Source: Chlorokybus atmophyticus (lineage: Eukaryota > Plantae > Mesostigma and Chlorokybus algae). From it: DNA of 64,000 nt. The position numbers were made by a program, and so were the translations under genes. Positions 4,070-64,000 of this stretch are shown piece by piece (position 1 is the stretch's first letter; every line of letters begins with the position of its first letter). The stretch lies in the NCBI GenBank assembly GCA_009103225.1, contig RHPI01003587.1, positions 1-64,000 of the forward strand, given 5' to 3'. The notes beneath the pieces were generated by a model, which worked only from the letters and a program-made list of their open reading frames with translations, was not told the DNA's origin and made no database searches.

Positions 4070-4606
4070 ATACGGTAGGTATCTCGAATGCTCTTGTCAT
4101 CATAATGTATACTTTTTCATGTATACATGCATGTTGTGCGCATATGTATGTTATTAAAATTGTATATTGCGTAATAAGTATACTTACATTATTGCAATAT
4201 CAAAAGTATTACAAATGAGAATGTTGGTTGTATATCCGCGTGGATTAGGATATGTCTAACGTAAGATACCTCGAATATGTCGTGACATGTTGCAAATAAA
4301 GACAACTCATCATATGTGGACTCCAAGTGCACTCTTGTTGGACAAGATTCAAAGTGCAACAATAAGTTCATTATTCTTGAATTGTTCGTGAATGCCCATA
4401 CCCAGCTTCAACGTAGCCCCAATTTCAATTCCATGAGGAGGGGCATTAGAAAGCTTTGTTCTGATCTCCTCGCTCGCCGTTGCCCCCGGGAGCGGGCGGC
4501 GGGGGGTGAGGGATATGGTGACAAGTGAGGGTGTGAGGTGTTATACTCGCATACACACGGGAGCAGTTGTTGCGATTGTGTAGCTACTCCCAACAGCTTT
4601 ACTGCC

Positions 4607-4638
4607 NNNNNNNNNNNNNNCCCCCCCCCCCCCCCCCC
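4607..4638. other. assembly gap plus poly-C tract
   Basis: N run followed by a C homopolymer. Confidence 0.95.
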
Positions 4639-6502
4639 TCCCCGAAAATAACTCGTACGAAGACTTCAAAATGTGCATGACGGTAGTGAAAGTCGATATT
4701 GGTCATCAAGACATGTCATTTTGCATAACCTTATGTATAACTCTTGATAAGTTACGAATCGATTGTGTATACGATCTAATATAATGTAATGTGAGTGATT
4801 GTATAATTATATGAACTTGCACAGCACCCCATCATACTGTGGGGGTGTGGCAGGTGCGTTTGCTGCTGCATCTCCTCCATCGCCTCCCTGACTGCCGTTG
4901 CATTCACTTAGTGTTGTTCTAGCCTAGGCCGCCTTGCCCCTGGTGCTAATGTATTGATGTGAGCGGCCTTGTGTTTAAGTTCGTGCTTGGCTTGTGCATG
5001 GGCGTGTACGCCAGAGCACTTGCATTGCACACTATCTGGCCCTTCACGGCTTTAGGTTCATGCTGCATACACGAAGTGTGCAATTCACGTATGACGCATT
5101 GCATGCAACATATCATGTGGTACAAATTTGATGCCCGATTCACTTACGTTAATCGTGTTGCAAACACAGCCACATAATAGCCCGTGTATACATGCGTGCC
5201 CCCAATGGCATACACGTACATACAAAAATGTAAGCGCATCTGAACTATGAAGTTGTAAGTAAATACTTACAACTTCGTAGTCTACTAAATGTGCAACTTG
5301 AATGTTGGGTTATCCCGCTCTTTTACGGGCATATTAACTTAATTTTATTACCTGTATAGGCCCCCAAAAAGGGAAGGGATTGCATTTGTATTGGTAGTCG
5401 TACGTCCATGCTGTTCATGTCAACTTAGCGCCCTCCCTATCTAATAAGGAGGGCATTCATGATACCAGCGTAGCCACGCAACTTGCAAGGGATCCAAAGC
5501 AGATCTGCAGGTCTCCAGCCTAATTGCTAGCCCTGTCATGGAGGTGATTCGCTTACACAGGCATGAAGGGTCACATCATGAGTCGCATGAACATAACTAC
5601 CGGTAGGCGTCGCTCGTAGTCTTCGCACGTGTCAGCATATCGCGCCCCGGATCTCATCGCTTTCAGCGCTTTTGGCCCTTTCCTCAGGGGATCATGGTCA
5701 AATGATCAGGTAAGGTCAAGTTATGGCTTTTAGACCAGTAGCATGATGCCACTGCTCAATCTGCAATAGGCATAATTGGGTACTGATTTCCAGGCAGTGG
5801 ACACAATTGCCTTTTAGCACCACATTGCATCACGCCCGCGCACATGGCGTCAAAATTGCCCCCTGCGCCATGCTGGAAACGCCTACTCAACGAAGCTTCT
5901 CCGCAAGCACGTGAAAATCAGCCGCCGCCGAGTCGGCCGCACACCACCGACACCACAGCCTGTACCACATTGCACTGTCTAGATGCAGTCGGCCTGAAGG
6001 CGCTGACCAACTGGCAAATCACCGGACAGCTGAAGGGAAATATATCGGACATGGCTTGTAGCTCTCAATGATGAATACAAAACCGCGGGAAAATGCGCTA
6101 TCACGCAGCGAAGCGGGTTAGGTGCGCGCCTTATCACGTGGTGCGTTGCGTCCCCCATTAAAGTGGCTGAGCACGGCACCTGTGTGCAACTTCGGGCGAA
6201 GTTTCGGGTACTAAAAGCACACACATGTGCCACGCATGTGTCGCTGTGTGTGAGGGTGTGTGCGTGCAAGGAGGCGTACATCTTGTTTTCCTTGGTATTG
6301 TTGTTGTCGTCGGCGGGCGGGGCGGAGGTGATACGGGGCGACTTGCCCCTTGCTAGCCACGGCATCGGCGCTGCGGAGCGAAGAAGGAGACAGGACGGTT
6401 TGGGCCAGAGAAGACAACGCTCTGACAGTTCTTCCTTCCTCTGACAAGGTGGCACCGCCAGGCCAGTGGAGGAGAAGCGGCCGCCCCCTGCGGTCTCCAG
6501 CC

Positions 6503-9500
6503 ATGGCGGGGGCGGCGGCGGCCGTGCTGTTGTTGCTGGGCTTGGCATCTGTGGCTTCGGCGTTGGAGCCCCCTTCCGACGCAGACCCCTCAGGCTACGG
6601 TCCGTACAGTTGCCCAGACTGCCCCATCAGGCACGACGTCATATCGCCGCCGCATGGGCCCTGGCCCATTGACTGGGAGCAGTTCCCTGACGCCTGCCCT
6701 GCATGCAGAGTAAGTGTGTTGACTTGAGTCGGTCGATCACCCTCTGTCGTTGTTGTCGTGGCATATTGATGTGTGTCCCTGCTCCCAGGATTCAGACCCT
6801 TGCCCGCTGAAGATTGTGCTGGACGACAAGATTATCTACAATGACTGGATGGCATTCAGCAGACTCAACGAGGAGGTATGTGTTTGTGTGACCTGTTCAT
6901 CTGTTTTGGTTGTCTCGGTAAATCTGCCTTGCCAGTGGTCTCATGCGCTTATGTGATGCATCACAGATCATGCCTTACGGGCTCAGCTACCAGCGACTGT
7001 ACTACCACTCCCACAACACGAGCGCATTCACCGCGACCAACACGGGTGCCTCACCCGTCACAATCACGGGGTTTGATCTCACGGGACCCTTTGAGCTGTA
7101 CGATTTCATCCCAGTACCCTACACACTACAAGCCGGTGAGTGAGTGTCACTGCATTCTTGCATGTATTGTGTAAGCTAGTCGTTATGCTCTATTCATGTG
7201 ATGTGATATGGCACACATACAGGCCAGAGCCTGAGGGTGAAGATACTGTTTTACGGGGACAACCCGGACCTGGCGGAGGAACTGTGGCATGGTAGCATCA
7301 ACGTGCGCACCAACGCTGCCTCCTGCACAAGCAATACCATCTGGCTCGCAGGCTTCTTCCAGGTATCATACTCATACAAGTAACATCTGCACTGTATCAC
7401 AACGACTCAAGTGGTGTCATCACTGGGCAAGGTTACAAACATGTCAGTCACTTTTACTTGCAGCGACTATTTGCATAGCCTGGCTGCAAAAAGTGATAGC
7501 CTCTGTTTTTCAAGTGCGATGGCTCTTGTATGTGCTTCTTCCCTGTGTGTGCGTATTCGTTCTGTGTAACTGTGTCCAGTCATACTGAAACGTGTGTATC
7601 AACAGCAAAGTGGTGAGACGTGTCGGGTACTTGGCCGGTACCAATACTGCGAGCCGGACATCTTCCGTTGCCTTGAGGTGTTTGGCATCGCCACCGCCAT
7701 CTGGGCCCCAGACAATGAGGTGTCCCCTTACAGTAAGCGACACAACTTTCACACACTCCCCACCACTCATCACAACCACGCATCTCAGCAACATGTCACA
7801 CGCAGACTCGCCTGCCAACCATTACGGGAGTTGGTTACAGTCCGGGGAGGAGGTTATGAGTGATTGGTGGATGGTAGCGGACCCAACGCAACCCGTGTTC
7901 GTGCAGTACGCCTTAACTCTCCGCCATATGTCACGCTACACATCTTCACCCATCGCGTACTATTACGAGCATTTCGCTGATCCACCCGCACCCATCTTCG
8001 TCACGGATGTTAGCCTGTAAGTGGGGACATGAGTGTTTGGTAACATTACATGTGTGTATGTGTACACCCTGTGACACAACATCCTGTTTGTGTGTGTAGT
8101 GGGGATGCCCAGACGGTTCACCCGAGGCAGACGAATGGTTCGAGTGCTGATGCTTACTTCTCGCCTATTGCGGGGAAGCCGTGGGCTATCGAGATCGGTG
8201 GTGTGCACGGCAACAGCACCAACAACTACCAGCAGAAGACGTGCATCACCAAGAAGAACCCCACGTGCGGGAAGAACGTGCGTTGGTTCCCCTACCGCAC
8301 GCGCTTCGGCAATATCATCCCGGGCACTTTCATCGTGTTCATGGACTACGACCGCGGCAACTGGGACTTCAATGACAACCTCCTTGTTGTACACAATGTA
8401 CGCCCGAAGAATGCCACCCTCATCCCCAATGATCAGCCATGGAGAGTGTCTCCACCTCCACCCAACCCACCACCTCCACCTTCCCCTCCTCCTTCCCCTC
8501 CTCCGTCTCCACCTCCCCCGCCACGTACGTGTACACGCCGTTGAATGTGTCACTCACCGTCATCACCGTGTATGTGGGTTTGTTGTGTTTAACACTCCTC
8601 TCGCCCACATGCAGCCAAGTGTGCCGGCACGGGTTTTGTGTTTGATACAGCGAGCCGCAACTGCTACAAGTTGTTGAGGAACCCTGACGGTAGTGTGGCC
8701 AACCTGACGCTTGCTCAGGCTCAGGCGTATTGCTCGTCTTCGGGTGGCTTCCTCGCCACGATGTTGTCTTCGCAGGACGAGACTGCTGTGAAGTCCCGCT
8801 GCAGCGTGGCCAACGGCACATGTTGGGTCAACCTCGCCCGCCTCAGCAAGTGCACATACAAGTATCCCACCGATTGTGGCGGGGACCGCACGTGTGCGTG
8901 TGCATTCATGTGGGGCAGTCCAGTCAACCAGGCTCTCAACTACAAACCCACATGGGCAGTAAACCAACCTAGTTCTGCGACCGATTATTGCGTGGTGTCC
9001 ACGCCTTCGGGGATGGATGACACATCGTGCACGGGGACTCTCTACCCTGCTGTGTGTCAAGCTGTGGCGCTCGACGACCCAACCCAACCCAAAGGCGACA
9101 TGAACGTGTTCACGCAGCCGATTGTTGGCGCTGTTATGGCTGTCGTGGGTGGGGTGACATATCAATCAAGTGCGGCCACGGGGAAGCTTTACTCACAGGC
9201 TAGGGTGTACTCGTGGTCGGCTGTTACCGCTCAAGATACAGTTACTGTTGGCAACATCACCTACGTGTTCGCCGGATACAACACAGGCAACGGCAACCCA
9301 ACCTACTTCATCACCCCTCCAAACCCACAGTACAGGTATGTGTACGTGTACTGTACTTGTGCTTTGCGTGCGTGCTTGCTTTTGAGCGCATGTGCGTGTG
9401 CATATACAAGTGTGTGCGTGAGCGCGCGTGTGTGTGGGTGCGCAGTCACTCAATATGTTTGTGTGGCCCTAACTGTTATACCTCTCTCTCTCTCAGGTAC

Positions 9501-42864: not shown

Positions 42865-45825
42865 CTTGACTGCCTCTTCTTGCACTGCTCAAGAACAACT
42901 TGCTCACACTCCGCCAGTAGCAGCTCACTTGCTACCGCAGCAATTGCAATGCAGGTGCACAGACGCCTACAGCCCAGAGCGCACAAACATACACACAAGT
43001 ACACAGCGCTGCATGCACCTGCCACAACGGGTGCCGCTGAAGGGAAGTAAGCCTGGAGCGCGAAGCAGCTTGCCAGTAACCGCTTGCAACGACTGAACTT
43101 ATCCCAACACACCCCGTGTTTATGTACACTACACTTGGCATGTGCTGACAACTCCTGCGCGTAGGTGCTTGGTATGCCCGCTCCCCCGCCTGCGGTACAG
43201 CAAGGGCTGAGTCAACGCGGAGTAGGCCTGATGGCTGAGTAAAGGGTACACTGAAAAGCACGGAGACAAAGCGGCGCGCAACAGAGAGTGCTCGGTTCGG
43301 CGCTTTGATTCGTTCCGTGCTGTGAAGGCGAGAGACGCGCATAACGCGCGTGACGATATTGGACATTGCAAACATCGGCCTCCAAGGTTAATGAACCATC
43401 CACGTCTATGCAGATTGCATTGCATTGCGAAAGGTACCATAAAGCATACCAGTAGGTTCAGCCCCTTAAATGCATCCACGACATTGATGCGCGTATAGCA
43501 TATAAATAGACCATGTCACACGTTGACAACACATAAGTATATGTGTTCCACGCAGCTTGCATGACCACTATGAGTATAATAGTGGGGTTGACAAAGAGTT
43601 GTGACGTATCATTATTGTCGAGAGACGATTGCTTGAACATAACATTATTCTGTAATCGTTATGAGTAATACGGTATAATTCTGGAGTCCCTTTTGTAATT
43701 GTCCCTTATCCATGGAAGGTATTGCAAATGAACCTTTACAAAGGGGGGGGGGGGNAAAGTATATACCTTACGTATATATGAGTCGTAGGGCAAGAAGGGC
43801 TAAGCCACCAACGTAGAGTCTATGGAGAATTTGGCACAAGGTTAGAAATTACATGTGTGCAAAAGAACGTTGAGGGTATTGGCTGCGTGCAACGCATACT
43901 ACATACATAACGTACACAGCACTATGCAAGTTAAACTCGCAGCTGCATGCCACCAATTAGCGCCACCAACAGCATGCATGAAATGCATGGAGAGTGTGGC
44001 GGGGAGGGGGCGGGCGTAGCACACAGCATAGCACCACATAATCCACAACACACGTGCTTGCTGTTCGTCTCCACGCCTCTACTACCACACCACTTGTTGC
44101 CGCACTGTGGACTCAAGCTGGTTGGTTGGTGCTTGCTGCTACTGCTATTTTAAGCTTCACCACCGGCACGTGGTGAAGAATTGCATTGCACATAAGTCAC
44201 TTAACATAGTGTAGTGTGATGGCTTCAGGTGTAATGTAAGTATGTTGCCTTGCTTTGTTTGCTTGAGTGCTGCTGTTGTTGTTCGTGTGTGTGCACAGAT
44301 TGCGTATAAAAATGAAAGCTACATATGTGCAATATGATGCATTACCTATGCATGGCAATCACACACACGCACCTTGGACTAGACACGACAATAGTATACC
44401 GGGCTCAACTACGCCCATATTGTCTACTTCTCTCTCCTACTTTAGGATTACAACTACCCCACCCTACTAGTAGTGTATGAGGTTCAGCCCTACCAGACAT
44501 TATGAAACATGCACATTACCCAAGGCAAGAGAGATAATGAATCTAAGCGGAGGATATGATATAAGCTAGCCCTACTCCAACCGCACCACATTACATGATC
44601 CATGTGCATGGCTCATACACAGTGTGCAAATGCATTGCAAGACTAGCTCCCGCACCGTTCTAATAGTAGGTTGCGGTGGGCAAGGCAAGATCTCGCCTTG
44701 TCGACACGGCGAAGAGGGGAACAACATGCATTTATGTAAATTGCATGTTAGATTAGCATACATGACATATGACACTGGTCGCATACCATTTTAGGCAAGT
44801 TATTAATGCCAATTTATTGTTTGGCATGTTAAACAATCTCGTAATTTAAGACAATGCATAGCGCACATGCTTGGTCATTGTCGTCGTCGTCATCCTTATT
44901 GTTATTAACGCGAGGCTAACCGCTGCTTTGGCCTCCCCTGCTCCGCTTTGCAAGTATAGCCCCTTCGGGTGTCGACCACCGTCCCAACCAGCCTGCTTTA
45001 CACATAGTTCCAACCCCCTTAGCACTAGGGTGGTTGTAATTTGCTGCTTGCGCAATGTCATGCTCTATGTGGATGTTACTGGGGGGCCCCTTTACCATAT
45101 GCTTAATGCATATGGTACAGGGCTATATGTTGCCTGTCAATATATGCCGCAACTCTCAAGGGCACTATCGTCTATCATTGTCTTATGTATATCAGAACTA
45201 AGACAAAGCGGTTGGAGCGCAACCCAGTAAAGCACATTGATCGTGCTGTTAGGTAAAGTAAAGTGCAGTAAAGTAAAGTACAGAGCAAGCGAGCTGAATA
45301 TATGAAAGGTATCATAGATATAATTACTTTCAAGTCTTATAAAACGGTTAATATTGGCATAAAAAGAGTAAATAAGTAAAGAATTTAATCAAAGAGTTGC
45401 TCAATTACGCTTTAACAATGCAGTTGGTAATACTAACTTCCTACAACTGCGTTGAGTCTTTTAGATCCTACCACTGCTACATAGTTTTTCAGATAGATGA
45501 TAATCAACTTTATTCTAGCCTTATCAGTCCAATTACGGTGACTTGCACGTACAAACCGTTAGCGTAATTAAGTTGAAGCAAATAAGATTATTAATGAATT
45601 ACATATAATAGACATAAGAGCTGTGCGAGGCACACACTCGCATGTGTAAGTGCTCAACTCCAATGATCTTGATGCACACCGAGGTAGGGTACATCCTCCC
45701 AAAACCTTGTTCCGACGAAGCATATTGTGGAGTGAGATAGCTGCATAGTGCCTCAGCGGTAAGTAACCTATCAAAGTTGGTGAGTTAATACACTCAATTC
45801 ACGCACACACACACCCACACACACC

Positions 45826-45830
<5 letters not shown>

Positions 45831-45909
<79 letters not shown>
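45831..45909. repeat. (AG)n microsatellite
   Basis: Direct observation. Confidence 0.95.
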
Positions 45910-45910
<1 letters not shown>

Positions 45911-45911
45911 N

Positions 45912-46572
45912 GCGATAAGGCATTGCAGGTACAGCAGTGCCATCACATGGCGTTGAGCAGCACCGCCGCAGCCTCACTTGCAAACATATCCGCCCAACAG
46001 ACAACCAACCCAGGCAACCAACCTTCTTCTCATGTTGCAATGAACCAAACCAATAAGTCTCTGAACAGCCAACCAATTTGACTGCTGCGTCTGCGCAGGG
46101 TCTCTGCCTTGGTGCGGTTGTTGTAGAAGCACCTGATGATGGCCGCATCCTGCGTGGTGTGGCTCGCAAACACCAACCAAAGCTGTATGGAGGGCTTGAT
46201 GCCGGTGCGATGCGACCGGGTTAGTTGCTTTGTTGTTGCTGAAAACCGATGTTCACTGTATGGGGGAACCCCGCTGCCCTGCTGCTCTTCCACCAGGGGA
46301 GTTGTTCACGGGGAGCAAGCGTCAGTGCTGTTACAGCTTGAGAGGCAACGCGTGCTGCTATGCGGGCATCTTGACGTACGGGCTTCATGCTGGCTTGCTA
46401 CTCAACGGTTGTGCGGGTGGTATTCAAGGCGCTCATGCTGTTGTGGGTGACTGAGACGGTCATGGTCTGGACTTTCAGGTGCTGTAACGACAGATCCCTT
46501 CTGCCTGCACATGAAACTTGTTGGCTGCAAGCGCTCCCACCGAGGTAGTTTACTTGCAGGCAAGCACGTTCG
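45912..46572 (-). pseudogene. Degenerate partial duplicate of the 3' exons and introns of the NIDO gene (about 40090-40760)
   Basis: Shared blocks include ATGGCGTTGAGCAGC..CCGCCGCAGCCTCACT..AACATATCCGCC, GAGGGCTTGATGCCGG, GGTGCTGTAACGACAGATCCC and CTGCAAGCGCT. The copy has a frameshift/TGA and a TAC>TAG change. Confidence 0.8.
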
Positions 46573-51402: not shown

Positions 51403-54400
51403 ATGGCGGCGATGACGGCGATGGTGGTGCTGTTGGTGCTGCCTTTCATGGCAGCTGCAGCAGGTGAGAAAAGGTTTTACTGGTTGACTGAAGTTAGTTA
51501 CTTGCATTGGTTTAGCCAGCCAGGAAAATCTTCAACAACCCATGGGCTTGGTCAACCACAACACAAAAGCAACCGCATCACACAATAAGCAATGGGGCAG
51601 TGTTTCAACATCATCGCGCAAATCGAATATCCACAACGACGCCGCAGCAACACTAGTAACACATACTCAATGCAACGTACATTACTTACTGTGCTTTTAG
51701 TTTGCCACGAACAAGGCAACGATTATCTTGCCAACGTAATGTTTGTGAAGTGCATTGTGACAGTCAGGTAGACATTGCTTCTGAACTTAGTTTACTGTTG
51801 TTTCAACACAATGGGGTACGTGTCTCGGGGTTGGCCATCCACGGAAGACTATCAATTTTTGGGCTTAGACTACAACGCAGGGGCAACCACAACACAATAA
51901 TTGCTAATGTGTTGTTTGAACACCACTGTGTAGTTAGAAACAACACACTGATGTCAATGCACTCAATACAGAGTGAATAGCTTCTGTGCTGTAAAACGTA
52001 CATACGCAGCTGCAATCGTTATCTCTACAAAGTGTGGTGATATAGTCACGTATCAATGCCTTTGTGAGTGTCACAGCATAGAAGCAATGATTACCTCCGT
52101 TACAGTCTTTCATACACCTACATACATAAGTAGCTACAGAAGTTCAGATTTCACTCAGTCTGCAGCAGATTTGCCAAAGTGAGCTTGCAACCTTCCGTTT
52201 CAATATGGCACAAACACACATCCTCAAGAGCCAAGTAGTAGATACGCAATTGGTAGGCCTTGGTACACCTAAGTTGTGATGACACGTACTCCTGGTGTTG
52301 AAGTTTATTCCAAACTCCAAGGCAACAGTCTCACGCATGACATATCGACCTTGGTTTACGCAATGCTCAAGCACTAGATCAGGTGGTTTCCATCATTGAC
52401 ACCAGCCAATGCATCAGTGTCCGTGTCACCATGCCTGCGTGCTGGCCTCGTGTGTACATGTGCATTCTGCATCTTGATACCACACATGGTCACATATGCA
52501 TCTCATGTGGTGATGTGCATTGTGTCACCAGCCGACTTGCAAGGCCCATCGTTGTTGGACTCGATGATGTCGGAGGAGGCTTCGGGTTCACTTCGCGGCG
52601 TGCCGAGCTCCCTGCGCAACATGCTGCTGTACGCGCAGCATCTTGCCGACGGGGGCGGGAGCGAGCGTGATGGTGTGGTCGTATCGGGCGGCGTTCGCAC
52701 GCACCAACACCAACAACAAGATGGAGGAAGGAAGCTGCTCGCGCCGGGAGATGACACAGGGATGGGTTGCGGATTCTATGACGTCTTCTATGAGGGGTGC
52801 ATGCCCTGCTTTTACGGGTAGGTTGTTGTCGCTAGTCAGGTCCGCATACTACCAGTCTACACAATGTGGGTGCTTGTAATACATCAATCACAACATCATC
52901 ATGTGAACGTGTATGTGACTGATTTGCAGGCCTGCGGCGTGTGTGCCTTCGGGGACGTTCTACGATGAGTTTGCAGACTTCTATCAAGGCGAGGTGCGCG
53001 AGTCCTCCACCACCACGTACGAGGACTCCTTCACCGACCCAACTGGTTTCGCCTTCGGTGACCGTTCAGCCTCCAGCCTGTCACCTGTGTATTGGTCCCG
53101 CCGCACGCCCGCAGTTACGCCTTCGGGCGAGCCTTATCTCGGCCACGTCCCCGCACACACACACCTCGACATGGGCGTCACACAACTCCCGTCCAGTCCC
53201 GCGCAAGTGAAGCTGTCGTTTGAGCTTGTTGTTGTTGGCGGCGTGAGCAGCGTGACTGATGTTGTTGTGGAGCTTCTGGGTGAGGAAGGCGGGATGGCTG
53301 TGTTGGTGGCCGAGTCGAAAGAGTACGTGTCGAGACATGTGTTGGGCACCCCGTCGTATCGGTACGAGTACTGGTTCAACCACACGGGATCCAACATGCG
53401 CGTGCGCTTCACCGCGGTGGAGATGGACGAGGACGCAACGTGGGGTCTAGACAACGTGTCGCTGCGCACGCTCGTTGAGAACAACGCGCCCGAGGTGATG
53501 GACAGAGACATCCACACGCTGCCAGACCAACCCGCCACAATCGAGCTGCGTGGCTTCGACGAGGAGTGTGACAACCTCGATTTCGTCATTACGAGTCTCC
53601 CAACAGAAGGACGCCTCTTTTTCTGCGACTGCGAGTCCATATGGAGCGAAGCCCTCACACCCAACATGTTGCCGGCAGTGGTGCCGGGCCCGTGCCAACG
53701 TGTGGTTTATGCGCCTAGGGCAGACTCACCATCGGTCACAACCAACTCTGTCCCCTTCGACACGTTCACATACAAGGCCATTGACTCACTCTCACTGTCT
53801 TCTCCGGCCGGGTGGATTCGCATCTATGTGGAAGCGGACAACACGCCCACGCCAGTTGCTGGTGTGGAGGGCTACGCGTTGGCTTTTGATGGCATCGATG
53901 ACGTGTTGAGCATCGCACGCACACCCGCCACGCTCTCGTCATACTCGTCATTTACGGCTGAGCTGCGCTTCAAGCCCGCGGGCGATATCGGCGAATCCAT
54001 GGCCACATTGATGTCGAGGGTGGGGTCCTTTGCGCTGCGGATATCGCAGGTGGGTGGTATTGGCTTTGAGCTCATCACCGAGGTGGACACGCTCTCTTCG
54101 TGGAGCTTTGCATTGTACAACGATAGGTTGTGGCACCACGCTGCGTTGACCTTCAATGGCACTGTGGCTGCGCTGTATGTTGACGGCGAGTTGATTGCAA
54201 GTGCGGAGAGTGACAGTGATACGGTCATCCTGGCTTCTGACATCGGCATCACGGTTGGTGCGGACTCCAACAGCACACACGCAGGCGTGAACAGCGCCTT
54301 CCAGGGCCACATCGATGAGATCAGGCTGTGGTCCGTGGCTTTGAGTGGCGAGAAGGTGGCTGCATTGTTCAACTACACAACAACGTTGTCTGGGACAGAG

Positions 54401-57400
54401 GAGGGTCTCATAACCTACTTGCCTTGCAACGACAACACGTACACGTCGCCCGTGGTGTACGACAGCACTCCCGCACGCAACGATGGCTTTCTGGGCCTGC
54501 TAAACCGCGACGGGTACTCGGATGGCGTGTCCACGCGCTTCCCGGCGTACGTGGCTTCCACAGCGGTGTTTGGCAACATTGTGGAGACGGTTGAAGACAC
54601 CCCTGTTGTGATCACGCTACACGGCGGTCGGCCTAACGGCGGGGTCACGTTCGACATCGCCACGCTCCCGCTGTCGGGTAAGCTGTATCAGAGCGACGGC
54701 ATGAGCAAGGGGAGGTTGATATCAAGCTCGCCGTGGCCAATCAAGACCCGTTATGTTGTGTACGAACCCGACGTGGGCCTCAGTGGCGCCCCGCTCGACA
54801 TCTTCAAGTACCAGGCTTACGACGGGGAGGAGTTCTCGTATCGACAAGGCGTCGTTATCAACGTCATCTCGAGGAACAGCCCACCCACCCTCACCACGCC
54901 CGTGTTCAACGTATACATTACTCTCAACACGCCCAAGCGCATCAACCTGTTTGCCACCGACACCGACTCCCCCACACCAACATTCATGGTCACGCGCTTG
55001 CCTGCGCGCGGGTGGTTGAGGCAGGCCAACTGGACGGGTGCGGCGTACGTGCCAACATCAGATCTCATCACCTCGGTCAACACGCCTGTGACCAACGCTA
55101 ACGGGAAGCTATTCTACATCACATCTGGCGACACGGCTGATCTTGGCAATGAGGCGTATGACACCTTTGGCTACGTTGCCGTGGACACCGCGGGCGCGCA
55201 GTCCAACGAGGGTATTGTCAACGTGTTGTTTTCCAATGATGACGCCCCGCCCGCACTCGTGGCGGGAGAAGCGGGATACGCACTGCGCTTCAACGGCGAG
55301 CGCGACGAGCTCAACTTAGGTGAACTACCGTCGAACACAACATCTGTCACGTACGAGATATGGTTCCGCACATCTGCACTCCCGTCTGAGACACGCATGG
55401 TGCTGATGAGCGCCGGCCCACACGTTCTGCAGTGGACCAAAGCACAGGGCCTTGTGTTCTCTGTGGGAAACATTGCCACCATTGCTAGCTTTGACACCTT
55501 CAACGACGGGGCGTGGCACCACGTGTCTGCATCTGCCACCCGCGACAACATCTCCCTCGTCGTTGACGGGCAGAGCATTGGCTTCTCTCGCATCTCGAGC
55601 GAGGTGTCCAACATAGGTCCTGTTGTCTTGCGCGTGGGTGCGGATGAAGATAGGGTCGAGGGCACGTTCTTCAGCGGGGTCGTGGACGAGGTAAGGGTGT
55701 GGTCGATGCCACGCAACGCCAGCGAGGTGGCTTCGGACATGCGCACGCCGCTGCGCAACACCACGTGGGGACTCGTGCATTATTTCAGGTTGAACGAGGC
55801 GCAGGGTTCCACCGCGTGGGACTGCGCTCGCTCGCTCCCCGTGAGTGAGGCCCTCGGCTTCAACGGCATGGCTTCCACGCAACCCGAGTGGATCCCGTCC
55901 ACCGCACCCATCAATAATGTTGTCCACGCTGTCGAGGAGGAAGATGTTGTTATTCAACTTGCCGGCTACATGTCCGAGACGGAATCGTATCCTTCTGTTG
56001 TTGTCATGGTGCTTCCAGTCAATGGCACGCTGTACGCCGCGCACACGGACACGCACGGCGTGCGCACGCGCGGGGATGAGATCCTCTTTGCACCGTTCGC
56101 TCTCAGCGGCATGCATGTGGTGTACAACTCTGGACACGGCTACGGCAGCGACTACGACACGTTCACGTATGTCACAAGCGACGCGGAAGGCATCCCATTC
56201 TGGAAGCGACACTTCTACAGCGCAGATGACGGCGAGGGCGAGATTGAGGGCGATGAGGCGCTCTCATACGCACAAGTGGTCACCATCAATGTGCAGTTTC
56301 ATGAAGCCATCATCCAGGTGGACCCCTTTGAGGGTGTTGACGATGATGACCAACATACTGCCCACATCACGCCCGAGAGGCCTATCGCCAGCAGCGCGTC
56401 CTATGCTCTGCTCTTTGACGGCGTTGATGACGTGGCTGTGTTTGGCCCCTATGCTGCTTGCAACTTGACAGAGTCAGCCACCTTTGCTCTCTGGATGAAG
56501 ACAAATGTGTCATGCGCGGATGCGGTCACGGTGGTGTTGTCGGCGGGACCGTACGCCCTTGTGTGTTCAAAGATATACGGCCTCGCATTTGTCGCGAACA
56601 ACAAGACGGCCGCCAGCTACACTTTCATCAACGACGACAAGTGGCACTTTGTTATTGGCGCTTTTGATGGCATGAGTGCCAACATTGCCGTCGATGGTGT
56701 GGCGTATGAGGAGATGGCGGGTATTACGTTGGTTTCCAGCCATGCGGACCTCATCACGGTCGGGCAAGGTGTACACGCCGGAGACGCGTTCAATGGCATC
56801 ATTGACGAGTTCAGCATATGGAACAGCGTGGACGCGCCATCAGTGGTCACAAATGTGTCACTCAACAACAAGCGCACGCTCATGGGCAATGAGATTGGGT
56901 TGCAAGGCTACTGGCGATTCAACAGCGTGTTGGGTTCGCTGCTCGAAAGCGAGGCCCCGTTGCCAGCGGGCACTCTGCCTGAGGACATGCACAAGGGTGT
57001 AGGTGGTGATGTGGACACGCAGCCCGACAGCATCGCCTCCACGCTGCATGTATCAACCCTTGTATTGCTGATGGAGAACACGGAGGCCAAGCTTCGCCTC
57101 GTGGCGGGTAGCGTGTACGAGGACGTGCCGGATATCAAGGTCATTGCGCTGCCAAGAAACGGGAGACTGCTGATATCGCCTTCGGGCCGCACTCTGCCCC
57201 GCAACATGCGCGTGCCTGCGTTGACAAACATCACGTATGTGCCCGACAGGGACTTCAGCGGCAACGACAGCTTCATCTATGTCGTTGATGATGGGAGGGA
57301 CGTGTCTGCACCCGAGAAGGTCCACATAACAGTTGTGAATGTCAACGAGCCCCCTATCGTTAGCGATATCAAGCTCAAGGCTGATTTCTACAACCCCAAG

Positions 57401-60400
57401 GCAGTGATGGTGTGGCTGAAGGGCTCTGATGCGGACCCGGAGGATGATATCGAGCTGTTTATCACCACTCTGCCCGTCAAGGGCCAGCTCTTCCTGCGTA
57501 AGGATTCGCACACGGGAAGGCCAGCTGGCAAGGTGACGGCCATCAACACCCTCATCCCGAACAGCCACGTGTACTACGTGCCGCTGCTCAACACCATCGA
57601 CCCCGTCGACGCCTTTGGCTACCTCGCTCAGGACAGGAGCGGATATCGCAGCATGGAGGGACTTGTTACAATCGACGGCTCGGACTCGATATCTCACCCT
57701 GGCTCGAGCAGAGATACTCCACTCGCGGGAGAGGCGGGTTTGGCGCTCTCATTCGATGGCGTGGACGATGTGGCTCGACTCAGGTCCCTGGCTGACTACG
57801 GTATCCTTGACGGCACAATATCGCTCAGCCTGTGGTTCAAGACCTCGCTGACTGCTGGAGACACCGGCATGGTGCTGATATCGGCGGGAGGGGGCACGTA
57901 CACGCTGTCTTGGACCAAGATTGGTGCACTCCAGTTTACTTTCGGGACAAGCTCAGCAGTGCGCTCCTTCCTCCTGTTGAATGATGGCAGCTGGCATTGG
58001 GTCTCTTGCACTTGGAATGGCACTGTGGCTGAGCTGGGTGTTGATAGTGAAGCCTTTTACAGCGTGCTTGCGGATATCAACACCGAGGCTGCTCCCGCAG
58101 TCAACACCACCTCCCCTATCACCCTTGGCGCTGATATCAACCCCGACAGTGATGGTGGCTTCTTCAGCGGCTATGTGGATGAGTTGACAATAGGTTCTGC
58201 TTATGAGCCCGCTGTTGCACGATATCGCTTCAACGAAGCAGCTGGTGGAGACCTCATCAACGAAGTCAATGGCATGCATGATGGATATCTTGGCGCCGAC
58301 AATGGCAAGGCTGAGGAGATGCCTACTCGCGTGACATCCACTGCACCAATATCGGGCACGCCTTTGTTCATGGGTGATGCACCGATGATTGTGTCCATGC
58401 AGCAGGACTCAGTTGCTACAATCCTTCTGCCAGCTGTTGCATCAGAGTCGTTGAAGTTTTTGCTTTTAACCCTGCCGGAGCTCGGTTACATCAGCAACAG
58501 CCGCGGCGAAATCATTACCAGGGTGCCTCACGTGCTTCGCTCATCTGTCATCACATACACACCCGAGAGACACGGCTTCAGCACCGGGGATCAGCCTTAC
58601 GCATCCTTGATGTACGCGACAAAGTCACACGGGCAAAGGATATTCACATCCTCCCCTGTCAGCGTCGAAATCCGTGTATCAGCACCCTTTGGCAACACCG
58701 GCATCCTCGACATCACGGATGAGTTGGTCGTCACGAACAGCACAGGGAACATGCTCGAGTTTATTGGCGACAGCAAAGCCGCGGCCATCATCAATCTCAG
58801 AGGCATGCTTAGCGACCTGACTTCATTCACCGTTGAGTTGTGGTTCAGAGTCCCCAGCGCATCCACCGAAGCCCTCCTTGGGTTGGGTCCAGTCTCTCTC
58901 CATTGGACTAATGCCGGCGGCCTTGGGTTGCACTTGAACGGCACGACAACGATAGAGAGCGGGGAGGTGTACAATGACGGGCATTGGCACTACGCTTCGG
59001 TGTCTGTGAAGAAGCTTGAGAGCAACGTCAACGTGCCGGTGGAGCAGCCTGGTGACTTGCGCCTAGAACTCTTTATCGATGGACAGTATGTTGGGTCTGC
59101 AATCGGGCCGTATGTGGACTTGGATACCGTTGACTTGCTTATTGGTGCCAGTCTTGAGGACAGCTGGCAGGAGTACGGGCTTCCTCTATCTGGCAGCGTG
59201 GATGATATCCGCGTGTACGGGTACACACGTAACCCCGCTGACATGGAAGACAGGTTCACTACACCCGTACTTGAAGACGTCGTCGCATACTACCCACTTG
59301 ACAACAACTTCACCGACGTCACTGGCAACACCCGTGCCCGCATTGTGGGAGCCGTGGAGTTGCTTGCGAGCACCTCGCCAGCTGGCAGCCAAAGCGACCT
59401 CAGCCAGGATGAAGTTGTTGTTGTAGTATGGGATGAGAGCATGCCGGGTCCACCTATGGATGAGGACTCCAGCGTAGATGATGTAGAGGGTGCCAACCGG
59501 CCGCCCAACGCGCTGCCCGCGGGGTCTGCGCTGGTGTTTGACGGCGTGGACGACAGCGTAGATGTGCCAATACAAGCGGAGGGCTTGAGCGCGTTCACCA
59601 TTGAAGTGTGGCTGAAGACTTCAAGCCCCGCGAGCGAGTTCACCCCAATCGTGTGGGTCGCATCGGACGCCCCCTTCCCCCACATGCACCTCTACATGTC
59701 CCGCCTCGGCCTCGCCTTTGAGGTGTCCAACTCACTCGCTGCTGCCGTGAGCATAGGCCGCATCAACGACGGCATGTGGCACCACGTCGCGGCCTCATTC
59801 GACGGCGAGGCCACTTACGTGTACGTGGACGGCGCGATGACCGCCAACGCCACCCTCGACACGCCTTTGACGACATACCCGATGCCCAAACTGCGCCTCG
59901 GAGCCGTTTACTTCTCACCCGCAGAGTATTATAAGGGCTCTATGGACAACTTGAGGGTGTGGGATTATGCGCGCACGCAAGAGGAGATTGCATCTGACAT
60001 GAATGCGGCTCTGATGGGCGACGAGGAGGGCCTGCTGTTGTACCTTCCCTTTGATGATGTTTCTTTCGGTGGCTCAGCGGTTGTTGTGGACATCTCATCC
60101 CGCCACGCTGACGGTCTCACCACGGGCAAGCCTCGCTATCAGGTGTCCACCGCCCCCATCGACGTGTACAAGGTTGTCACGCAGGAAGAAACGTACGCCA
60201 ACATCACCCTCTTTGCTTCCGACGCAGACGAGTCCGACACGCTCATGTATGAGATCACATCTCTCCCCGCTGGCCAACTTTATGAGTCCGACACAGGCAA
60301 CCAGATTGTTGTCACGCCGATGCGGCTCGCCTCACCGCACGTGTACTTCATCGGGGAGCCATTGGAGTCCGGTGCGCCATACACGTCGTTCACATACGTC

Positions 60401-63400
60401 GCATATGATGACCAAGAGTGGTCTCAGCAAGCCACAGTGTCTATTAACGTCACCCCGGCGATTCATTTGGTCAAGCCTCTGCCCGTAAAGCTGGTGCAGG
60501 CTAGCAGTGATGCGCCCGTGATGATATCGCTGCAGGCATTTGATATCGATCTCACCAATGTGGACTTCAATGACTCGGTCAGCTTCATCATCACGACGGC
60601 ACCGAAGATGGGTCACATGTGGCAGACATATGACGGAGTTAGCTGCGAAGCACAGGATGTGTTGGCTGCGGGCATGAGCATTGTCTTTGTTGTTATCGAT
60701 GGTGTTGATACCGCAAGCGCAGCCGTCTGCTATGCCCCAATATCGAGCTTCAAGCCAGCATCCAGCAGCTACGTGGACACGTTCGGCTTCACCGCTGTCA
60801 ACCATGTGGGCACACCCGGCGCAGAGCAGCTCATCTCAGTCAACGTGACAAGCGCAGGTCCTGCGGGCCCTCAATCCCTTGGGTCCAATGCGTTGGCCGG
60901 AGATGCTGCCGTGTTCGACGGTGTGAATGATGTCATCAGCGTGATGGATGTCGGCGACCTCACGCATGCTGTATCTATCCAAGCTTGGGTCAGGAGCTCC
61001 GCTGCGGCATCAGCCGAGTCAACCATCGTTATCAAACCCGGCAGCTTTGCGCTGCGGCTCAGCAGCATGTCCGGTGTTGTGTTTGAAGTCCACTTTGCTG
61101 ATGAGAACGGCACATTGACAACGCTGTCATGTGCGTGTGGGTTGGAGTGCAACGTGGATGCCAACGATGGCAGCTGGCGCCAACTTACTGGCGTGTGGGA
61201 CCCAAGTGTTGCCACGGCGTCTCTCTACATCGATGGCAGCCTGATTAGCAGCAATGTGTGGGATGGATTTGAGAGCGCGGTTCAGGCGGTTGAAGGCTAT
61301 GAGGTCCTGCTGGTGGGTGGCGATGCCTCACTCATGTTGGGTGGCGATGGAGCTGCCGACCAGTATTTCAATGGTGCACTTGATGAGATTCGCATCTGGG
61401 ATGCGGCCCTGCCAGTTGATCAGATCAGCTCCCAGGTATGACAACCTCTGGTGGCAGTGCACAACGTGCACTTTTTCACATCAAGTCAAATGACACTGTA
61501 GTATTGCACTCATGCATGGTTGCTAGGCTGTTACGAAAACATACCATGCGCATGCACGTGCGTGCGCACACGTGTGTATCTGAGTGCCTGCATGCATACA
61601 TGTGGCTTGTGTGTGTATGCGCGTGCATGTGTGTGTGTTATCGCAAACAGCGTTTCTCTTTCCAACAGATGACTGTGATACTAAGCGGATCAGAAGACCA
61701 CCTTCTTGGCTACTGGAACTTCAACACGCTGGACGAGATCAACGCTGGCGGGGCAGTGTGGCCTTCTGATGAGGCATCCCCAACCCTCGCCGCGTCCTCA
61801 GCACCCGTGTATCACGCCAGCATCGACATCACTGAGACCGTCACCGCCACAATCAAGCTCTATGCTTTCAGCCCTGTCAGCGGCGCCAAATTCATCTTCT
61901 TTATCACCAGCGTCCCCAATATTGGCAGCGTGAAGGATGCAGCTACTGATGCGGAGATATCGGACCTGCCTTACTTGCTCAGCGGCAACAAGCTGACTTA
62001 CATCCCTGACTACATGAAGTATGGCGGCGCCTCGTTCGAGTATATCGCTTGGGATGGGAGCAGCTTCTCACAGCCGGCAACGATTGTGGTCAACGTGGAC
62101 TCGCAGAACCATCGACCTATGGTGCACCCGCAGCAGCTTGATATCACCGCTGCTTCGTCTGCGTTCGTCACTCTCACCGCTGATGACGATGATGCCGAAG
62201 ATGATATCACCTTCATGATCACTACTCTGCCAGCCACTGGCAAGCTGATGTTGCTCACCGGTGATGAAGTGACTGTTCCCGGCACGACATTGGCATCATT
62301 CAACAGGACGGCAGTCTTGTTGTTCACGCCGGATCCAACATTCGCTGTGGATGCGGATGCAAAGGTGGTCTTTGGATACAGCGTGACTGATGGCACTGTG
62401 CTCAGCGAGGAGGCTGTAATCACACTCACCATGCATCGAACGGTTGATGCATCGATGAAGCCGGTGGCCAATCCGGCCGGTTACGCTCTTCTCATGGACG
62501 GCAACGACGACTATGTGCTCATCAACATGGAGACAAACACTGTTGACGAATTCACTGCTGAGGTGTGGTTGAAGACGACGAGCGCGATGACCCACGGCGC
62601 CACGCTGTTTAACGCGGGATACATCTCTCTCTCGTGGACAGATGTGGGTGGCCTCGGCGTGGACGTCACGACCACTGAAGGCGCTGTTGTCACTGTTGGG
62701 AGCGGGAAGCAACTCAACGATGGCGACTGGCATCACGTGGCCGTCACATGGGTCCCGTTGGACCAGTCTGCTAGCGGCGAGAACGTCGTGATGTACATCG
62801 ATGGGGAGGTCACCGCTTCTCAAAGCGTGTCGGGTTACAACGGAAACATGGCACCCGTGGCCTTCATCGGTGCGGGCTTCGCGGATATCAACGCATTGAC
62901 TCCCAAATCCGACAGCTTCTACAGAGGACTGGTTGAGGAGGTGCGCGTGTACTCCCGCGCTCTGAGCCAGGGAGAGATTGAAGCCAACATGCTCGTCATG
63001 TCCCACGCCAACGCTGAGGGCCTACTGGCTTATCTCAACTTCAATGACGCTGCCAACATCATCACACTTCACCAAACCCGTGACTCAGCTGTTGTTGAAG
63101 AGAGGAGTGCAGTTGTGGTTGGCAAGCCCGCGCTGGTGATATCTGCCGTGCCAATGAGTCGTGTGGAGACAGCACAACAAGACCAGTCGCTCGTTATCAC
63201 CCTCAGCAGCGTGGATGTCGGCAGCTCCGTAGCGTATGTCACCGTGCCTCCGGCCAGCGGGACGCTGTATCAGATGTCCGGCGAGCCTATCAACAACGCA
63301 CTCGCCATCGTTACCGACCCCCTCATGCGCGTGGTGTTTGTGCCCGCACGTGAAAAGGGTGATGTGGACATCAATCTACCATACGCGTACACGAGCATGC

Positions 63401-64000
63401 GCTACTTCATCGCCAATACTGATATCAAGCTGCAGTCGGATGAAATTGAGCTTTACATAACGGTGTTGCCAGTGAATCACGCTCCCGAGTTGGCTCAGTA
63501 CCAAGTCATGGACATCATGGCGTTGACAGACACCGCCATCACGCTACCCGCTGTCGATGTGGATGGCAACTTGCTAACGTTCCAAATAACCACTCTCCCT
63601 ACTCAGGGCGTGTTGTACGCTACCGTCGACGGGGTCACACGCGGCGACATCATCACCTCCGCCAACACGCAGCTTCCGGGCCACTCCGGCACAGTCATCC
63701 TCAGCATGTTGGGTGCACAACACGCCAATGGCACCGCCCTCATGGCACCCTACCTGGGCTACAGAGTGTTTGACAGCTTGACGTGGCAGGAGAATGTGCC
63801 CGAGGCCATTGTTGTGTTCAATGTCAGCGAGTCCACAAAGATACCCCTCATTGCCGGTGATGCGGGCCACGCGCTTGAGTTTGATGGCACGGGTGAGGAT
63901 GTTGTTGTTGTGGAGATGTTGTCATCACTTGAGTTAAGTAGCAACAACCATGTCACGGTGGAGGCGTGGATCAAGACACCAGGCGGGGTCGGTCAAGCCG
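51403..64000 (+). CDS. Giant secreted LamG / cadherin-like (Ig) repeat protein, partial (>3,700 aa, runs off window)
   Basis: Exons 51403-51463 (signal MAAMTAMVVLLVLPFMAAAA), 52532-52817, 52930-61435 and 61669->64000 join in frame. At least nine (Y/H)ALxFDGxDD...WHHVA...FxGxxDExRxW LamG units are separated by LPxxGxL...DxFxY Ig-like repeats. Confidence 0.9.

What the first reader, a model, noticed from the sequence alone, without database searches (positions are those of the whole stretch)
51403..64000. Giant bacterial-adhesin-like surface protein: at least 9 LamG domains alternating with cadherin/Ig-like repeats
Seen: one spliced frame of at least 3,720 codons with a signal peptide. LamG starts recur near 53870, 55270, 56400, 57735, 58745, 59520, 60900, 62480 and 63860. 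A full unit is about 450 aa (LamG plus two Ig-like repeats); units 2, 4 and 5 are shorter, as if Ig modules were lost. Known: LamG_3 plus cadherin-like/Big_9 repeats are typical of giant bacterial surface proteins, and animal CSPG4/NG2 also combines LamG with cadherin-like CSPG repeats. Inference: an undescribed algal extracellular multivalent glycan-binding scaffold or adhesin, possibly built from bacterial modules.
Basis: partly seen in the sequence, partly recalled or inferred. Interest (0 to 1): 0.75.

Follow-up and report, generated by a model that had tools for sequence, protein, structure and literature searches.

The report
Giant algal LamG-cadherin-REJ surface receptor
This is the first 60% of a real gene of about 6,170 codons in the alga Chlorokybus, wrongly split in two in the public annotation, that encodes a giant membrane-anchored surface protein shared with other early relatives of land plants.

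Summary
A four-exon frame (51403-64000, 3,728 codons in the window) starts with a signal peptide. It carries 8 complete LamG domains, the start of a ninth, and 13 Ig-like repeats of about 100 residues.

- The gene is already in the JGI Chlorokybus proteome, but split into two models at the unspliced intron 61436-61668. Joined, they give about 6,168 residues.
- The downstream half lies outside the window. It adds 2 complete LamG (11 in all), then a REJ domain, a sub-threshold GPS motif (HHL-TTF), a proline-rich stalk, one membrane helix and a short tail. So the protein is a type I membrane receptor or adhesin, not a free scaffold.
- The same domain order occurs in a Chlorokybus paralogue, in Chara braunii (7,993 aa), in Mesostigma viride (7,527 aa) and in several metagenome proteins.
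- LamG domains group by position across species, so the array predates the split of these lineages.
- Outside the family, all named relatives of the LamG and Ig modules are bacterial. The strict LamG-Ig-Ig alternation, the N-terminal module and the REJ end are family-specific.

I found no paper on it. Glycan binding, cleavage and localisation are untested.

The parts
51403..51463 (+). Exon 1: start codon and 20-residue signal peptide (phase-1 donor GTGAGA at 51464)
   Evidence: identical to the N-terminus of JGI model P0001
51464..52531 (+). Intron 1 (GT..AG, 1,068 nt)
   Evidence: the junction is reproduced in P0001
52532..52817 (+). Exon 2: family-specific motifs VPSSLRNMLLYAQHL and GCGFYDVFYEGCMPCFY (Cys cluster)
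   Evidence: both motifs are near-invariant in Chlorokybus paralogue, Chara and Mesostigma; no Pfam match
52818..52929 (+). Intron 2 (GT..AG, 112 nt)
52930..61435 (+). Exon 3: one 8,506-nt exon (2,835 codons) holding the N-domain, 9 Ig-like repeats and LamG1-7
53051..53494 (+). N-terminal all-beta domain ending in WGLDNVSL; a CBM/MAM-like jelly-roll (tentative)
   Evidence: no Pfam or PDB sequence match; conserved in the 4 full-length homologues; AF2 pLDDT 65-80 in context; best structural matches are CBM27/28/22/4 at Z 6-7.8, which is weak
53495..53851 (+). Ig-like repeat 1 (four conserved Cys)
53888..54361 (+). LamG1
   Evidence: AF2 and Foldseek matches to laminin LG and neurexin LNS
54566..55252 (+). 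Ig-like pair 2-3 (54566-54886, 54905-55252); repeat 2 is the best conserved stretch of the protein
55292..55732 (+). LamG2
55910..56203 (+). Ig-like repeat 4 (followed by an acidic insert up to 56416)
56417..56848 (+). LamG3
57050..57697 (+). Ig-like pair 5-6 (57050-57355, 57383-57697); holds the best Big_9, Cadherin_4/5 and tandem-95 matches
57755..58216 (+). LamG4
58382..58687 (+). Ig-like repeat 7
58781..59245 (+). LamG5 (first of the conserved LamG-LamG pair)
59540..59992 (+). LamG6 (best Pfam Laminin_G_3 match, profile 1-151 of 151)
60167..60862 (+). Ig-like pair 8-9 (60167-60466, 60491-60862)
60917..61435 (+). LamG7, first part; its last strand is encoded after intron 3 (61669-61725)
61436..61668 (+). 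Intron 3 (GTATGA..AACAG, 233 nt, phase 0). It is left unspliced in the public annotation, which ends model P0001 at the TGA at 61439-61441
61669..64000 (+). Exon 4, open to the window end; its 777 codons are identical to residues 1-777 of the next JGI model P0057 (3,217 aa)
61807..62448 (+). Ig-like pair 10-11 (61807-62118, 62131-62448)
62497..62982 (+). LamG8
63157..63846 (+). Ig-like pair 12-13 (63157-63486, 63499-63846)
63883..64000 (+). LamG9, first 39 residues only; it is completed in P0057 residues 739-916

Best explanation
The window holds the 5' 60% of one Chlorokybus gene of about 6,168 codons for a giant type I plasma-membrane glycoprotein.

Order of parts:
- signal peptide
- conserved Cys motif
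- CBM-like beta-sandwich
- one Ig-like repeat
- a fixed array of 11 LamG domains, spaced mostly by pairs of cadherin-like Ig repeats
- PKD/REJ module
- GPS-like motif
- hydroxyproline-type proline-rich stalk
- one TM helix
- a tail of about 60 residues with a conserved R-[ST]-x-A-x-L-[ED] motif

What is shown: the gene structure, the domain order, the topology signals, and conservation with positional orthology across Chlorokybus, Mesostigma and Chara.

What is inferred:
- The LamG and CBM-like domains each bind a component of the extracellular matrix (mucilage, wall or scale polysaccharide, or a partner glycoprotein).
- The Ig pairs are stiff, probably Ca2+-locked, spacers. They hold 11 non-equivalent binding sites along a rod more than 100 nm long.
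- The REJ/GPS module and the glycosylated stalk couple that rod to the membrane.
- The protein therefore tethers and probably senses the matrix. This is the same logic as sea-urchin suREJ1 (lectin domains, REJ, one TM) and the polycystin-1 ectodomain.
For: Gene and merge:
- Exons and introns were read directly from the sequence.
- Exons 1-3 equal P0001, and exon 4 equals residues 1-777 of P0057.
- Splicing restores the LamG7 C-terminal pattern '...DQISSQ|MTVILSGSEDHLLGYWNFN', as in LamG6 and LamG8.
- P0001 aligns to the N-terminal half and P0057 to the C-terminal half of single Chara and Mesostigma proteins. One HSP of 3,416 columns links P0057 to Mesostigma 4095-7377.

Domains:
- Laminin_G_3 scores 5.8e-111.
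- In P0057, REJ scores 4.1e-42, and a GPS motif aligns over 43 of 45 profile positions at residues 3006-3047, at 16.7 bits.
- The membrane helix lies at P0057 3127-3151, followed by RRRRNK.
- The stalk, helix and tail motif align across five family members.

Age and constraint:
- LamG domains cluster by position, not by species. Examples: the L01 clade at 98/95, and CkA_L09+Chara_L10 with CkB_L05+Meso_L10 at 100/98.
- The first 790 residues of exon 3 are 43-47% identical to the homologues.

Secretory and Ca2+ hints:
- There are 31 N-x-S/T sequons.
- N-x-[AP]-P linkers are followed by DxD-type acidic clusters at the Ig_a/Ig_b junctions.

Fold: AF2 gives all-beta domains, with matches to laminin LG, neurexin LNS, PAPP-A, CBM40 and MAM-Ig.

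suREJ1's binding to a fucose sulfate polymer is cited from PMC4700764.
Against: - No ligand, localisation, expression or cleavage data exist.
- The REJ, GPS, TM and tail lie outside the window. They are known only from a public gene model that is itself mis-split.
- The splice of intron 3 is inferred, not seen in RNA.
- GPS is below Pfam's threshold, and the H-L-T triad is absent from the four homologues aligned.
- The N-domain model is of low confidence (pLDDT 57-80), and its CBM matches (Z below 8) are in the range of chance similarity.
- LamG domains bind proteins, steroids and glycans alike, so 'glycan-binding' is a prior, not a result.
- The three host algae have very different surfaces (scales, mucilage packets, calcified walls), which argues against one simple wall ligand.
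Confidence: 0.6

Rival explanations
1. Gamete or zoospore recognition receptor. As in sea-urchin suREJ proteins, the Ectocarpus male-gamete REJ protein and the Cryptosporidium GGC proteins, it would sit on flagellate reproductive cells and recognise a polysaccharide coat of the partner or substrate.
For: The layout REJ + GPS-like + lectin-type domains + single TM is that of suREJ1. REJ proteins are repeatedly linked to fertilisation. All three host genera make scaly flagellate cells (own knowledge).
Against: Sex is unknown in Chlorokybus and Mesostigma (own knowledge). Gamete-recognition proteins usually evolve fast, whereas the N-terminal 800 residues are 43-47% identical across very deep splits. 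No expression data were available.
Confidence: 0.15
2. The public annotation is right: intron 3 is retained, and the gene ends at 61441. That would give a secreted, anchor-less 2,952-residue LamG scaffold, with the downstream model being a separate gene or an alternative isoform.
For: JGI model P0001 ends at the TGA at 61439-61441. Exon 4 begins with ATG. Alternative soluble and anchored isoforms are common for surface receptors (own knowledge).
Against: P0001 would end inside LamG7, lacking its last strand. P0057 would start inside a LamG with no signal peptide. Chara, Mesostigma and the paralogue are continuous across this point.
Confidence: 0.1
3. Bacterial contaminant, recent horizontal transfer, or a decaying pseudogene.
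For: The LamG_3, Big_9 and tandem-95 modules are overwhelmingly bacterial. All named non-family hits are bacterial.
Against: There are three GT-AG introns, a eukaryotic signal peptide, and G+C like the rest of the window. The reading frame is intact for more than 11 kb. Collinear homologues occur in three streptophyte genera, with position-wise orthology. There are no tandem DNA repeats. In the one tree built, algal LamG domains form one clade against the bacterial outgroup, at 100/100 (only one bacterial protein was sampled).
Confidence: 0.02

Closest known systems
Sea-urchin sperm receptor for egg jelly suREJ1 / REJ family (PKDREJ, polycystin-1 ectodomain)
   Same: A large ectodomain with carbohydrate-recognition modules and Ig-like (PKD) repeats, followed by a REJ domain (Pfam 4.1e-42 in P0057) and a GPS motif next to the membrane. 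Like suREJ1, it has a single TM helix and a short tail.
   Different: LamG_3 and cadherin-like repeats replace C-type lectin, EGF and PKD repeats. There is no PLAT domain, no 11-TM part and no channel-like part. GPS scores below threshold. A proline-rich stalk is inserted between GPS and TM. The protein is four times longer than suREJ1. The lineage is plant, not animal.
Bacterial giant 'tandem-95 repeat' / LamG-jellyroll surface proteins (Bacteroidota, Planctomycetota, Verrucomicrobiota, Myxococcota)
   Same: They use the same two module types (Laminin_G_3; Big_9/Cadherin_4/5 repeats of about 95-100 aa). They give the best sequence matches outside the family.
   Different: Bacterial proteins carry runs of one module (IIII... 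or LLLL...), plus T9SS, RTX or RHS ends. The algal family has strict LamG-Ig-Ig alternation, its own N-terminal module, REJ/GPS, a eukaryotic signal peptide, a TM anchor and introns.
Animal LamG surface receptors: alpha-neurexin, CSPG4/NG2
   Same: They are type I proteins with several LamG/LNS domains separated by small spacer domains, one TM helix and a short tail. Neurexin LNS domains are among the best structural and profile matches.
   Different: The spacers are cadherin-like Ig pairs, not EGF or CSPG repeats. There are 11 LamG domains instead of 6 or 2. Cadherin_3 (the CSPG repeat) scores only 18 bits, below its cut-off. No PDZ-type tail is seen.
Dictyostelium Sib (similar to integrin beta) adhesion proteins
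   Same: The Ig_SibA repeat family matches (87 bits in paralogue P0002; 2 of 13 repeats here). They are type I adhesion molecules built partly from bacterial-type repeats.
   Different: No VWA domain and no NPxY talin-binding tail were found. The LamG array and REJ are absent from Sib proteins (own knowledge).

Membership tests
Laminin_G_3 / LamG (concanavalin A-like) domain | Profile match above the Pfam gathering score | tested here: met
   367.8 bits against a cut-off of 27.6, with 7 stretches in exon 3; 89 bits in exon 4. Local jackhmmer finds 8 complete copies and 1 partial copy.
Laminin_G_3 / LamG (concanavalin A-like) domain | Beta-sandwich jelly-roll fold like laminin LG and neurexin LNS | tested here: met
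   In the AF2 model LamG1 has pLDDT 62-83 and is all-beta. Foldseek matches 2jd4, 3qcw, 7zc9 and 2r16 at E 1e-5 to 1e-7. The model is of moderate quality only.
Laminin_G_3 / LamG (concanavalin A-like) domain | Ca2+-dependent ligand-binding rim | not tested
   The invariant residues (ND..WH, VDG, DE.R.W) are core residues. The rim residues were not analysed.
Bacterial Ig / tandem-95 / cadherin-like repeats (Big_9, Cadherin_4/5, NF012211) | Profile match above the curated cut-off | tested here: inconclusive
   Big_9 scores 38.8 bits against 23.6 for exon 3 as a whole. Only 4 of 13 single repeats match at E below 0.1. Cadherin_4 and Cadherin_5 score below their cut-offs. NCBIfam tand_rpt_95 scores 43 bits against 90. 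Paralogue P0002 scores Big_9 91.7 and Cadherin_4 45.7, both above cut-off.
Bacterial Ig / tandem-95 / cadherin-like repeats (Big_9, Cadherin_4/5, NF012211) | Repeat of about 95-100 residues with an acidic DxD cluster and an N-x-x-P linker (Ca2+ junction) | tested here: inconclusive
   The period is about 100 aa. N-x-[AP]-P follows the first repeat of 4 pairs, and DxD-type clusters occur in 5 to 6 of the second repeats. Ca2+ binding itself cannot be tested here.
REJ / polycystin-1 family | REJ domain | tested here: met
   PF02010 scores 144.8 bits against 25 in P0057 residues 2322-2727. This is the continuation of this gene beyond the window. It also scores 143.8 bits in P0002.
REJ / polycystin-1 family | GPS motif with an H-L-[ST] cleavage triad next to the membrane | tested here: inconclusive
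   PF01825 scores 16.7 bits against 22.5, covers 43 of 45 profile positions, and sits at residues 3006-3047 in the expected place. The HHL-TTF sequence is present here but not in the four homologues aligned.
REJ / polycystin-1 family | PLAT domain and multi-pass (11-TM) C-terminus | tested here: not met
   There is one hydrophobic helix only (P0057 3127-3151) and no PLAT or PKD-channel match. It resembles single-pass suREJ1, not polycystin-1.
CSPG4/NG2 | CSPG (Cadherin_3) repeats after two N-terminal LamG domains | tested here: not met
   Cadherin_3 scores 18 bits against 25.5. LamG domains are interspersed along the protein, not N-terminal.
Bacterial RTX/LapA-type or T9SS giant adhesins | Bacterial secretion or anchor signals (RTX repeats, retention module, T9SS C-terminal domain) | tested here: not met
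   None appear in the Pfam scans. Instead there are spliceosomal introns, a signal peptide and a TM anchor.

The most novel reading that the evidence does not exclude
Streptophyte algae carry an ancient family of 6,000-8,000-residue matrix receptors of an 'animal' type, present before the Chlorokybus/Mesostigma-Chara split and already in two paralogous lineages. Each has 11-12 non-equivalent LamG sites on cadherin-like spacers, wired to the membrane through a REJ/GPS module that is autoproteolytic in at least the Chlorokybus copy. If land plants lack it, it would be a lost, polycystin-like way of sensing the extracellular matrix in the plant lineage.
Probability: 0.3. Interest if true: 0.75.

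Novelty: new variant of a known kind. Interest (0 to 1): 0.6.

Why it matters
- It corrects a public annotation: two adjacent Chlorokybus models are one gene of about 6,168 codons.
- It defines an undescribed protein family shared by Chlorokybus, Mesostigma and Chara. The family joins module types otherwise typical of bacterial adhesins (LamG_3, tandem-95) to a REJ/GPS membrane module otherwise known mainly from animal polycystins and sperm receptors.
- The fixed order and position-wise orthology of about 12 LamG domains over very deep divergence imply that each site has its own conserved job. That is unusual for repeat proteins and can be tested with glycan arrays.
- How the earliest streptophytes attach to and sense their scales, mucilage or walls is poorly known. 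Land-plant wall sensors (CrRLK1L, WAK) are unrelated, so this is a concrete candidate.

Tried and rejected
The C-terminus came instead from the representative search.
- Word searches with the N-domain and with REJ-GPS returned only the query. They missed even the known paralogue P0002, so these blanks say nothing about distribution.
- The N-domain gave no Pfam or PDB sequence match. Its fold searches gave only weak CBM, MAM and jelly-roll matches. I call it CBM-like only tentatively.
- The first atlas call matched tandem-95 clusters and, at 0.88, a giant-virus Laminin_B cluster. These are leads only.
- Antisense ORFs of 214-295 aa inside the gene have no family match, and no Rfam family is present. 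There are no tandem DNA repeats.
- The contaminant, recent-HGT and pseudogene readings were rejected (see rival explanations).
- The joined, spliced protein was never sent to any tool. All searches were run exon by exon by reference, or with the public models P0001 and P0057 separately.
- The REJ-to-tail part could not be folded, because it has no window reference and exceeds the size limit as a whole protein.
Full report
**Origin of the window.** Notes of this scan name the genome as Chlorokybus. I confirmed this: exon 3 is 100% identical to the eukprot/JGI protein Chlat1/2678/Chrsp18S02987 (P0001, 2,952 aa).

**Observation.**
- A single open frame runs from 52919 to 61438, and another from 61420 to the window end.
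- Direct reading gives an ATG at 51403 with a hydrophobic signal peptide. The donor is GTGAGA at 51464 and the acceptor AG at 52530-31 (exon 2 = 52532-52817). The next donor GTAGGT is at 52818 and the acceptor at 52928-29 (exon 3 = 52930-61435). The last donor GTATGA is at 61436 and the acceptor AACAG ends at 61668 (exon 4 = 61669 onward). All junctions are in phase.
- P0001 reproduces exons 1-3 exactly.
- That makes 3,728 codons in the window.
- Pfam gives Laminin_G_3 at E 5.8e-111 (7 stretches) for exon 3 and 4.4e-25 for exon 4, plus weaker Big_9, Cadherin_4/5/3 and Pentaxin matches.
It also finds 13 Ig-like repeats of about 100 residues.

**The gene is longer than annotated.**
- P0001 stops at the TGA two codons into intron 3.
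- A search of 1.84 billion representative proteins with exon 4 returned P0057 (eukprot, 3,217 aa). Its first 777 residues are identical to exon 4. P0057 is thus the next annotated gene model downstream.
- Four observations say the two models are one gene:
  1. LamG7 is cut by the intron. Splicing gives '...DEIRIWDAALPVDQISSQ|MTVILSGSEDHLLGYWNFN', the same C-terminal pattern as the other LamG copies.
  2. P0057 has no signal peptide and starts inside a domain. P0001 has no anchor and ends inside a domain.
  3. P0001 aligns collinearly with the N-terminal half, and P0057 with the C-terminal half, of single proteins from Chara braunii and Mesostigma viride.
  4. The Chlorokybus paralogue P0002 is continuous.
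- The whole protein is then about 2,951 + 3,217 = 6,168 residues.
- I did not send the joined sequence to any tool. Every search was made exon by exon or with the two public models separately.

**Architecture.** In the strings below, N is the N-domain, I an Ig-like repeat and L a LamG domain.
- From the order is: signal peptide, then a conserved exon-2 module (VPSSLRNMLLYAQHL and GCGFYDVFYEGCMPCFY), then an N-terminal beta-sandwich, then I L II L I L II L I L L II L II L II L II L L II.
- This is followed by PKD-like/REJ (Pfam REJ 4.1e-42), a GPS motif, a proline-rich stalk of about 70 residues, one TM helix, RRRRNK and a tail of about 60 residues.
- The GPS motif scores 16.7 bits, below the 22.5 cut-off. 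It aligns over 43 of 45 profile positions and reads VVCYSHHLTTFAAF.
- The total is 11 LamG and 19 Ig-like repeats.
- Within Ig pairs, the first repeat is usually followed by an N-x-[AP]-P linker. The second usually opens with a DxD-type acidic cluster. From what is known of cadherins, this is the signature of a Ca2+-locked junction (inference).
- There are 31 N-glycosylation sequons in the window part.

**Structure.**
- AF2 on exon-3 residues 1-790, with a four-row orthologue alignment, gave mean pLDDT 51. The domains themselves scored 60-83 and were all-beta.
- Foldseek matched laminin LG, neurexin LNS, PAPP-A, pikachurin, CBM40 and PTP-mu MAM-Ig.
- A profile of family members against PDB sequences matched LamG proteins, and KIAA0319L PKD domains at the start of the REJ region.
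- The N-domain alone (pLDDT 57) matched many carbohydrate-binding modules (CBM27, 28, 22, 4, 8) at Z 6-7.8, and MAM/CBM6 weakly in Foldseek. These values are within the range that the tool warns may be generic, so 'CBM-like' is tentative.

**Relatives.**
- The same N-domain, the same L/I order (including both L-L pairs), REJ and a C-terminal TM helix occur in four full-length proteins:
  - P0002 (Chlat1/9224, 4,215 aa)
  - P0058 (Chara braunii GBG67786.1, 7,993 aa, 'hypothetical protein' / 'Laminin G domain-containing protein')
  - P0059 (Mesostigma viride Mesvir1 Mv22741, 7,527 aa)
  - the merged gene described here
- Metagenome proteins P0060, P0062, P0067, P0072 and P0113 share the alternating order. 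P0062, P0072 and P0113 also carry REJ.
- Among all 206 fetched proteins, the regular L-I-I alternation occurs only in this family. A few other hits (P0015, P0027) mix the two modules irregularly. Named bacterial hits carry runs of one module; they include tandem-95 repeat proteins of Planctomycetaceae, Chloroflexota and Thalassotalea, and proteins of Pedosphaera, Candidatus Magnetomorum, Bacteroidota and Sorangium.
- I named only about 30 of the 150 best hits, and the word searches for distribution were blank for technical reasons. Absence from land plants and chlorophytes is therefore not shown.

**Age.**
- A maximum-likelihood tree of 41 algal LamG domains shows grouping by position, not by species.
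  - LamG1 of all four proteins forms one clade (98/95).
  - CkA_L09+Chara_L10 joins CkB_L05+Meso_L10 (100/98).
  - The last LamG of all four groups together (98/68).
- At each resolved position this gene pairs with Chara and the paralogue pairs with Mesostigma. Trees of the N-terminal 700 residues (85/92) and, in part, of REJ show the same.
- The array was therefore already assembled, and probably already duplicated, before these lineages split.
- There are no DNA-level tandem repeats, and LamG copies within the protein are only 23-30% identical.
- Contaminant, recent transfer and pseudogene readings are rejected.

**Mechanism (inferred).**
[quoted passage not shown] The polycystin-1 ectodomain has the same layout.
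- REJ proteins are also linked to gametes in Ectocarpus and Cryptosporidium.
- I propose a membrane-anchored, multivalent matrix-binding rod that tethers and senses extracellular polysaccharide or glycoprotein. A conserved tail motif (R-[ST]-x-A-x-L-[ED]) would serve for intracellular coupling.
- A role restricted to gametes or zoospores is the main functional rival.

**Literature.** No paper in the searchable library combines Chlorokybus, Chara, Mesostigma or streptophytes with laminin G, LamG, PF13385 or REJ. Neither of the two genome papers mentions these domains. None of the gene identifiers appears in any paper.

**Earlier notes of this scan.** Another first-reader note in this genome reports a 'polycystin-1-like ectodomain (PKD/REJ + GPS-like) on a single-pass stalked receptor' on another piece. 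I did not examine that locus. It agrees with what I see in P0057 and P0002.

**Verdict.**
- This is a real and well-conserved, but uncharacterised and mis-annotated, giant surface receptor.
Its 'free scaffold, possibly built from bacterial modules' reading needs changing to 'ancient streptophyte-algal, REJ/GPS-anchored type I receptor built partly from bacterial-type modules'.

Noticed in passing
window 61436-61668 and models P0001/P0057: The public JGI Chlat1 annotation splits this gene at an unspliced 233-nt intron. Model 2678 (Chrsp18S02987) ends at a read-through TGA, and the next model starts at the first codon of exon 4.
   Followed up: yes
P0002 (Chlat1/9224, Chrsp99S08484), elsewhere in the genome: A 4,215-residue paralogue has the same N-module, 6 LamG, REJ, a proline-rich stalk and a TM helix. 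In every resolved tree position it groups with the Mesostigma protein, whereas this gene groups with Chara. This suggests two old paralogue lineages with differential loss.
   Followed up: partly
P0057 residues 3006-3047 (beyond the window end): The GPS-like motif here carries a canonical H-L-T triad (HHLTTF). The paralogue, Chara, Mesostigma and metagenome homologues do not. Autoproteolysis, if any, may be specific to this copy.
   Followed up: partly
C-terminal tails of P0057, P0002, P0058, P0059: A short motif R-[ST]-x-A-x-L-[ED] is conserved close to the C-terminus of the cytoplasmic tail, hinting at a conserved intracellular partner.
   Followed up: no
metagenome proteins P0060/P0067 (ENA contig length 42,353 listed for both), P0062 (IMG, 12.9 kb contig), P0072, P0113: Environmental sequences share the family-specific LamG-Ig-Ig order, and P0062, P0072 and P0113 also carry REJ. 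Their organisms are unknown. The nearly intron-free 10.4-kb coding stretch of P0062 resembles the 8.5-kb exon here.
   Followed up: partly
I did not check them. If they are real, proline-rich stalk anchoring recurs in this genome.
   Followed up: no
window 45771-46169 (minus-strand ORF): This ORF translation contains a long (LS)n run and an X, that is, a CT/GA-type simple repeat with an ambiguous base in the intergenic region upstream of the gene.
   Followed up: no
window 52931-53875 (N-domain + Ig1): The protein-atlas feature search put a Laminin_B cluster dominated by giant viruses (Nucleocytoviricota) at rank 2 (score 0.88). This is a lead only.
   Followed up: no
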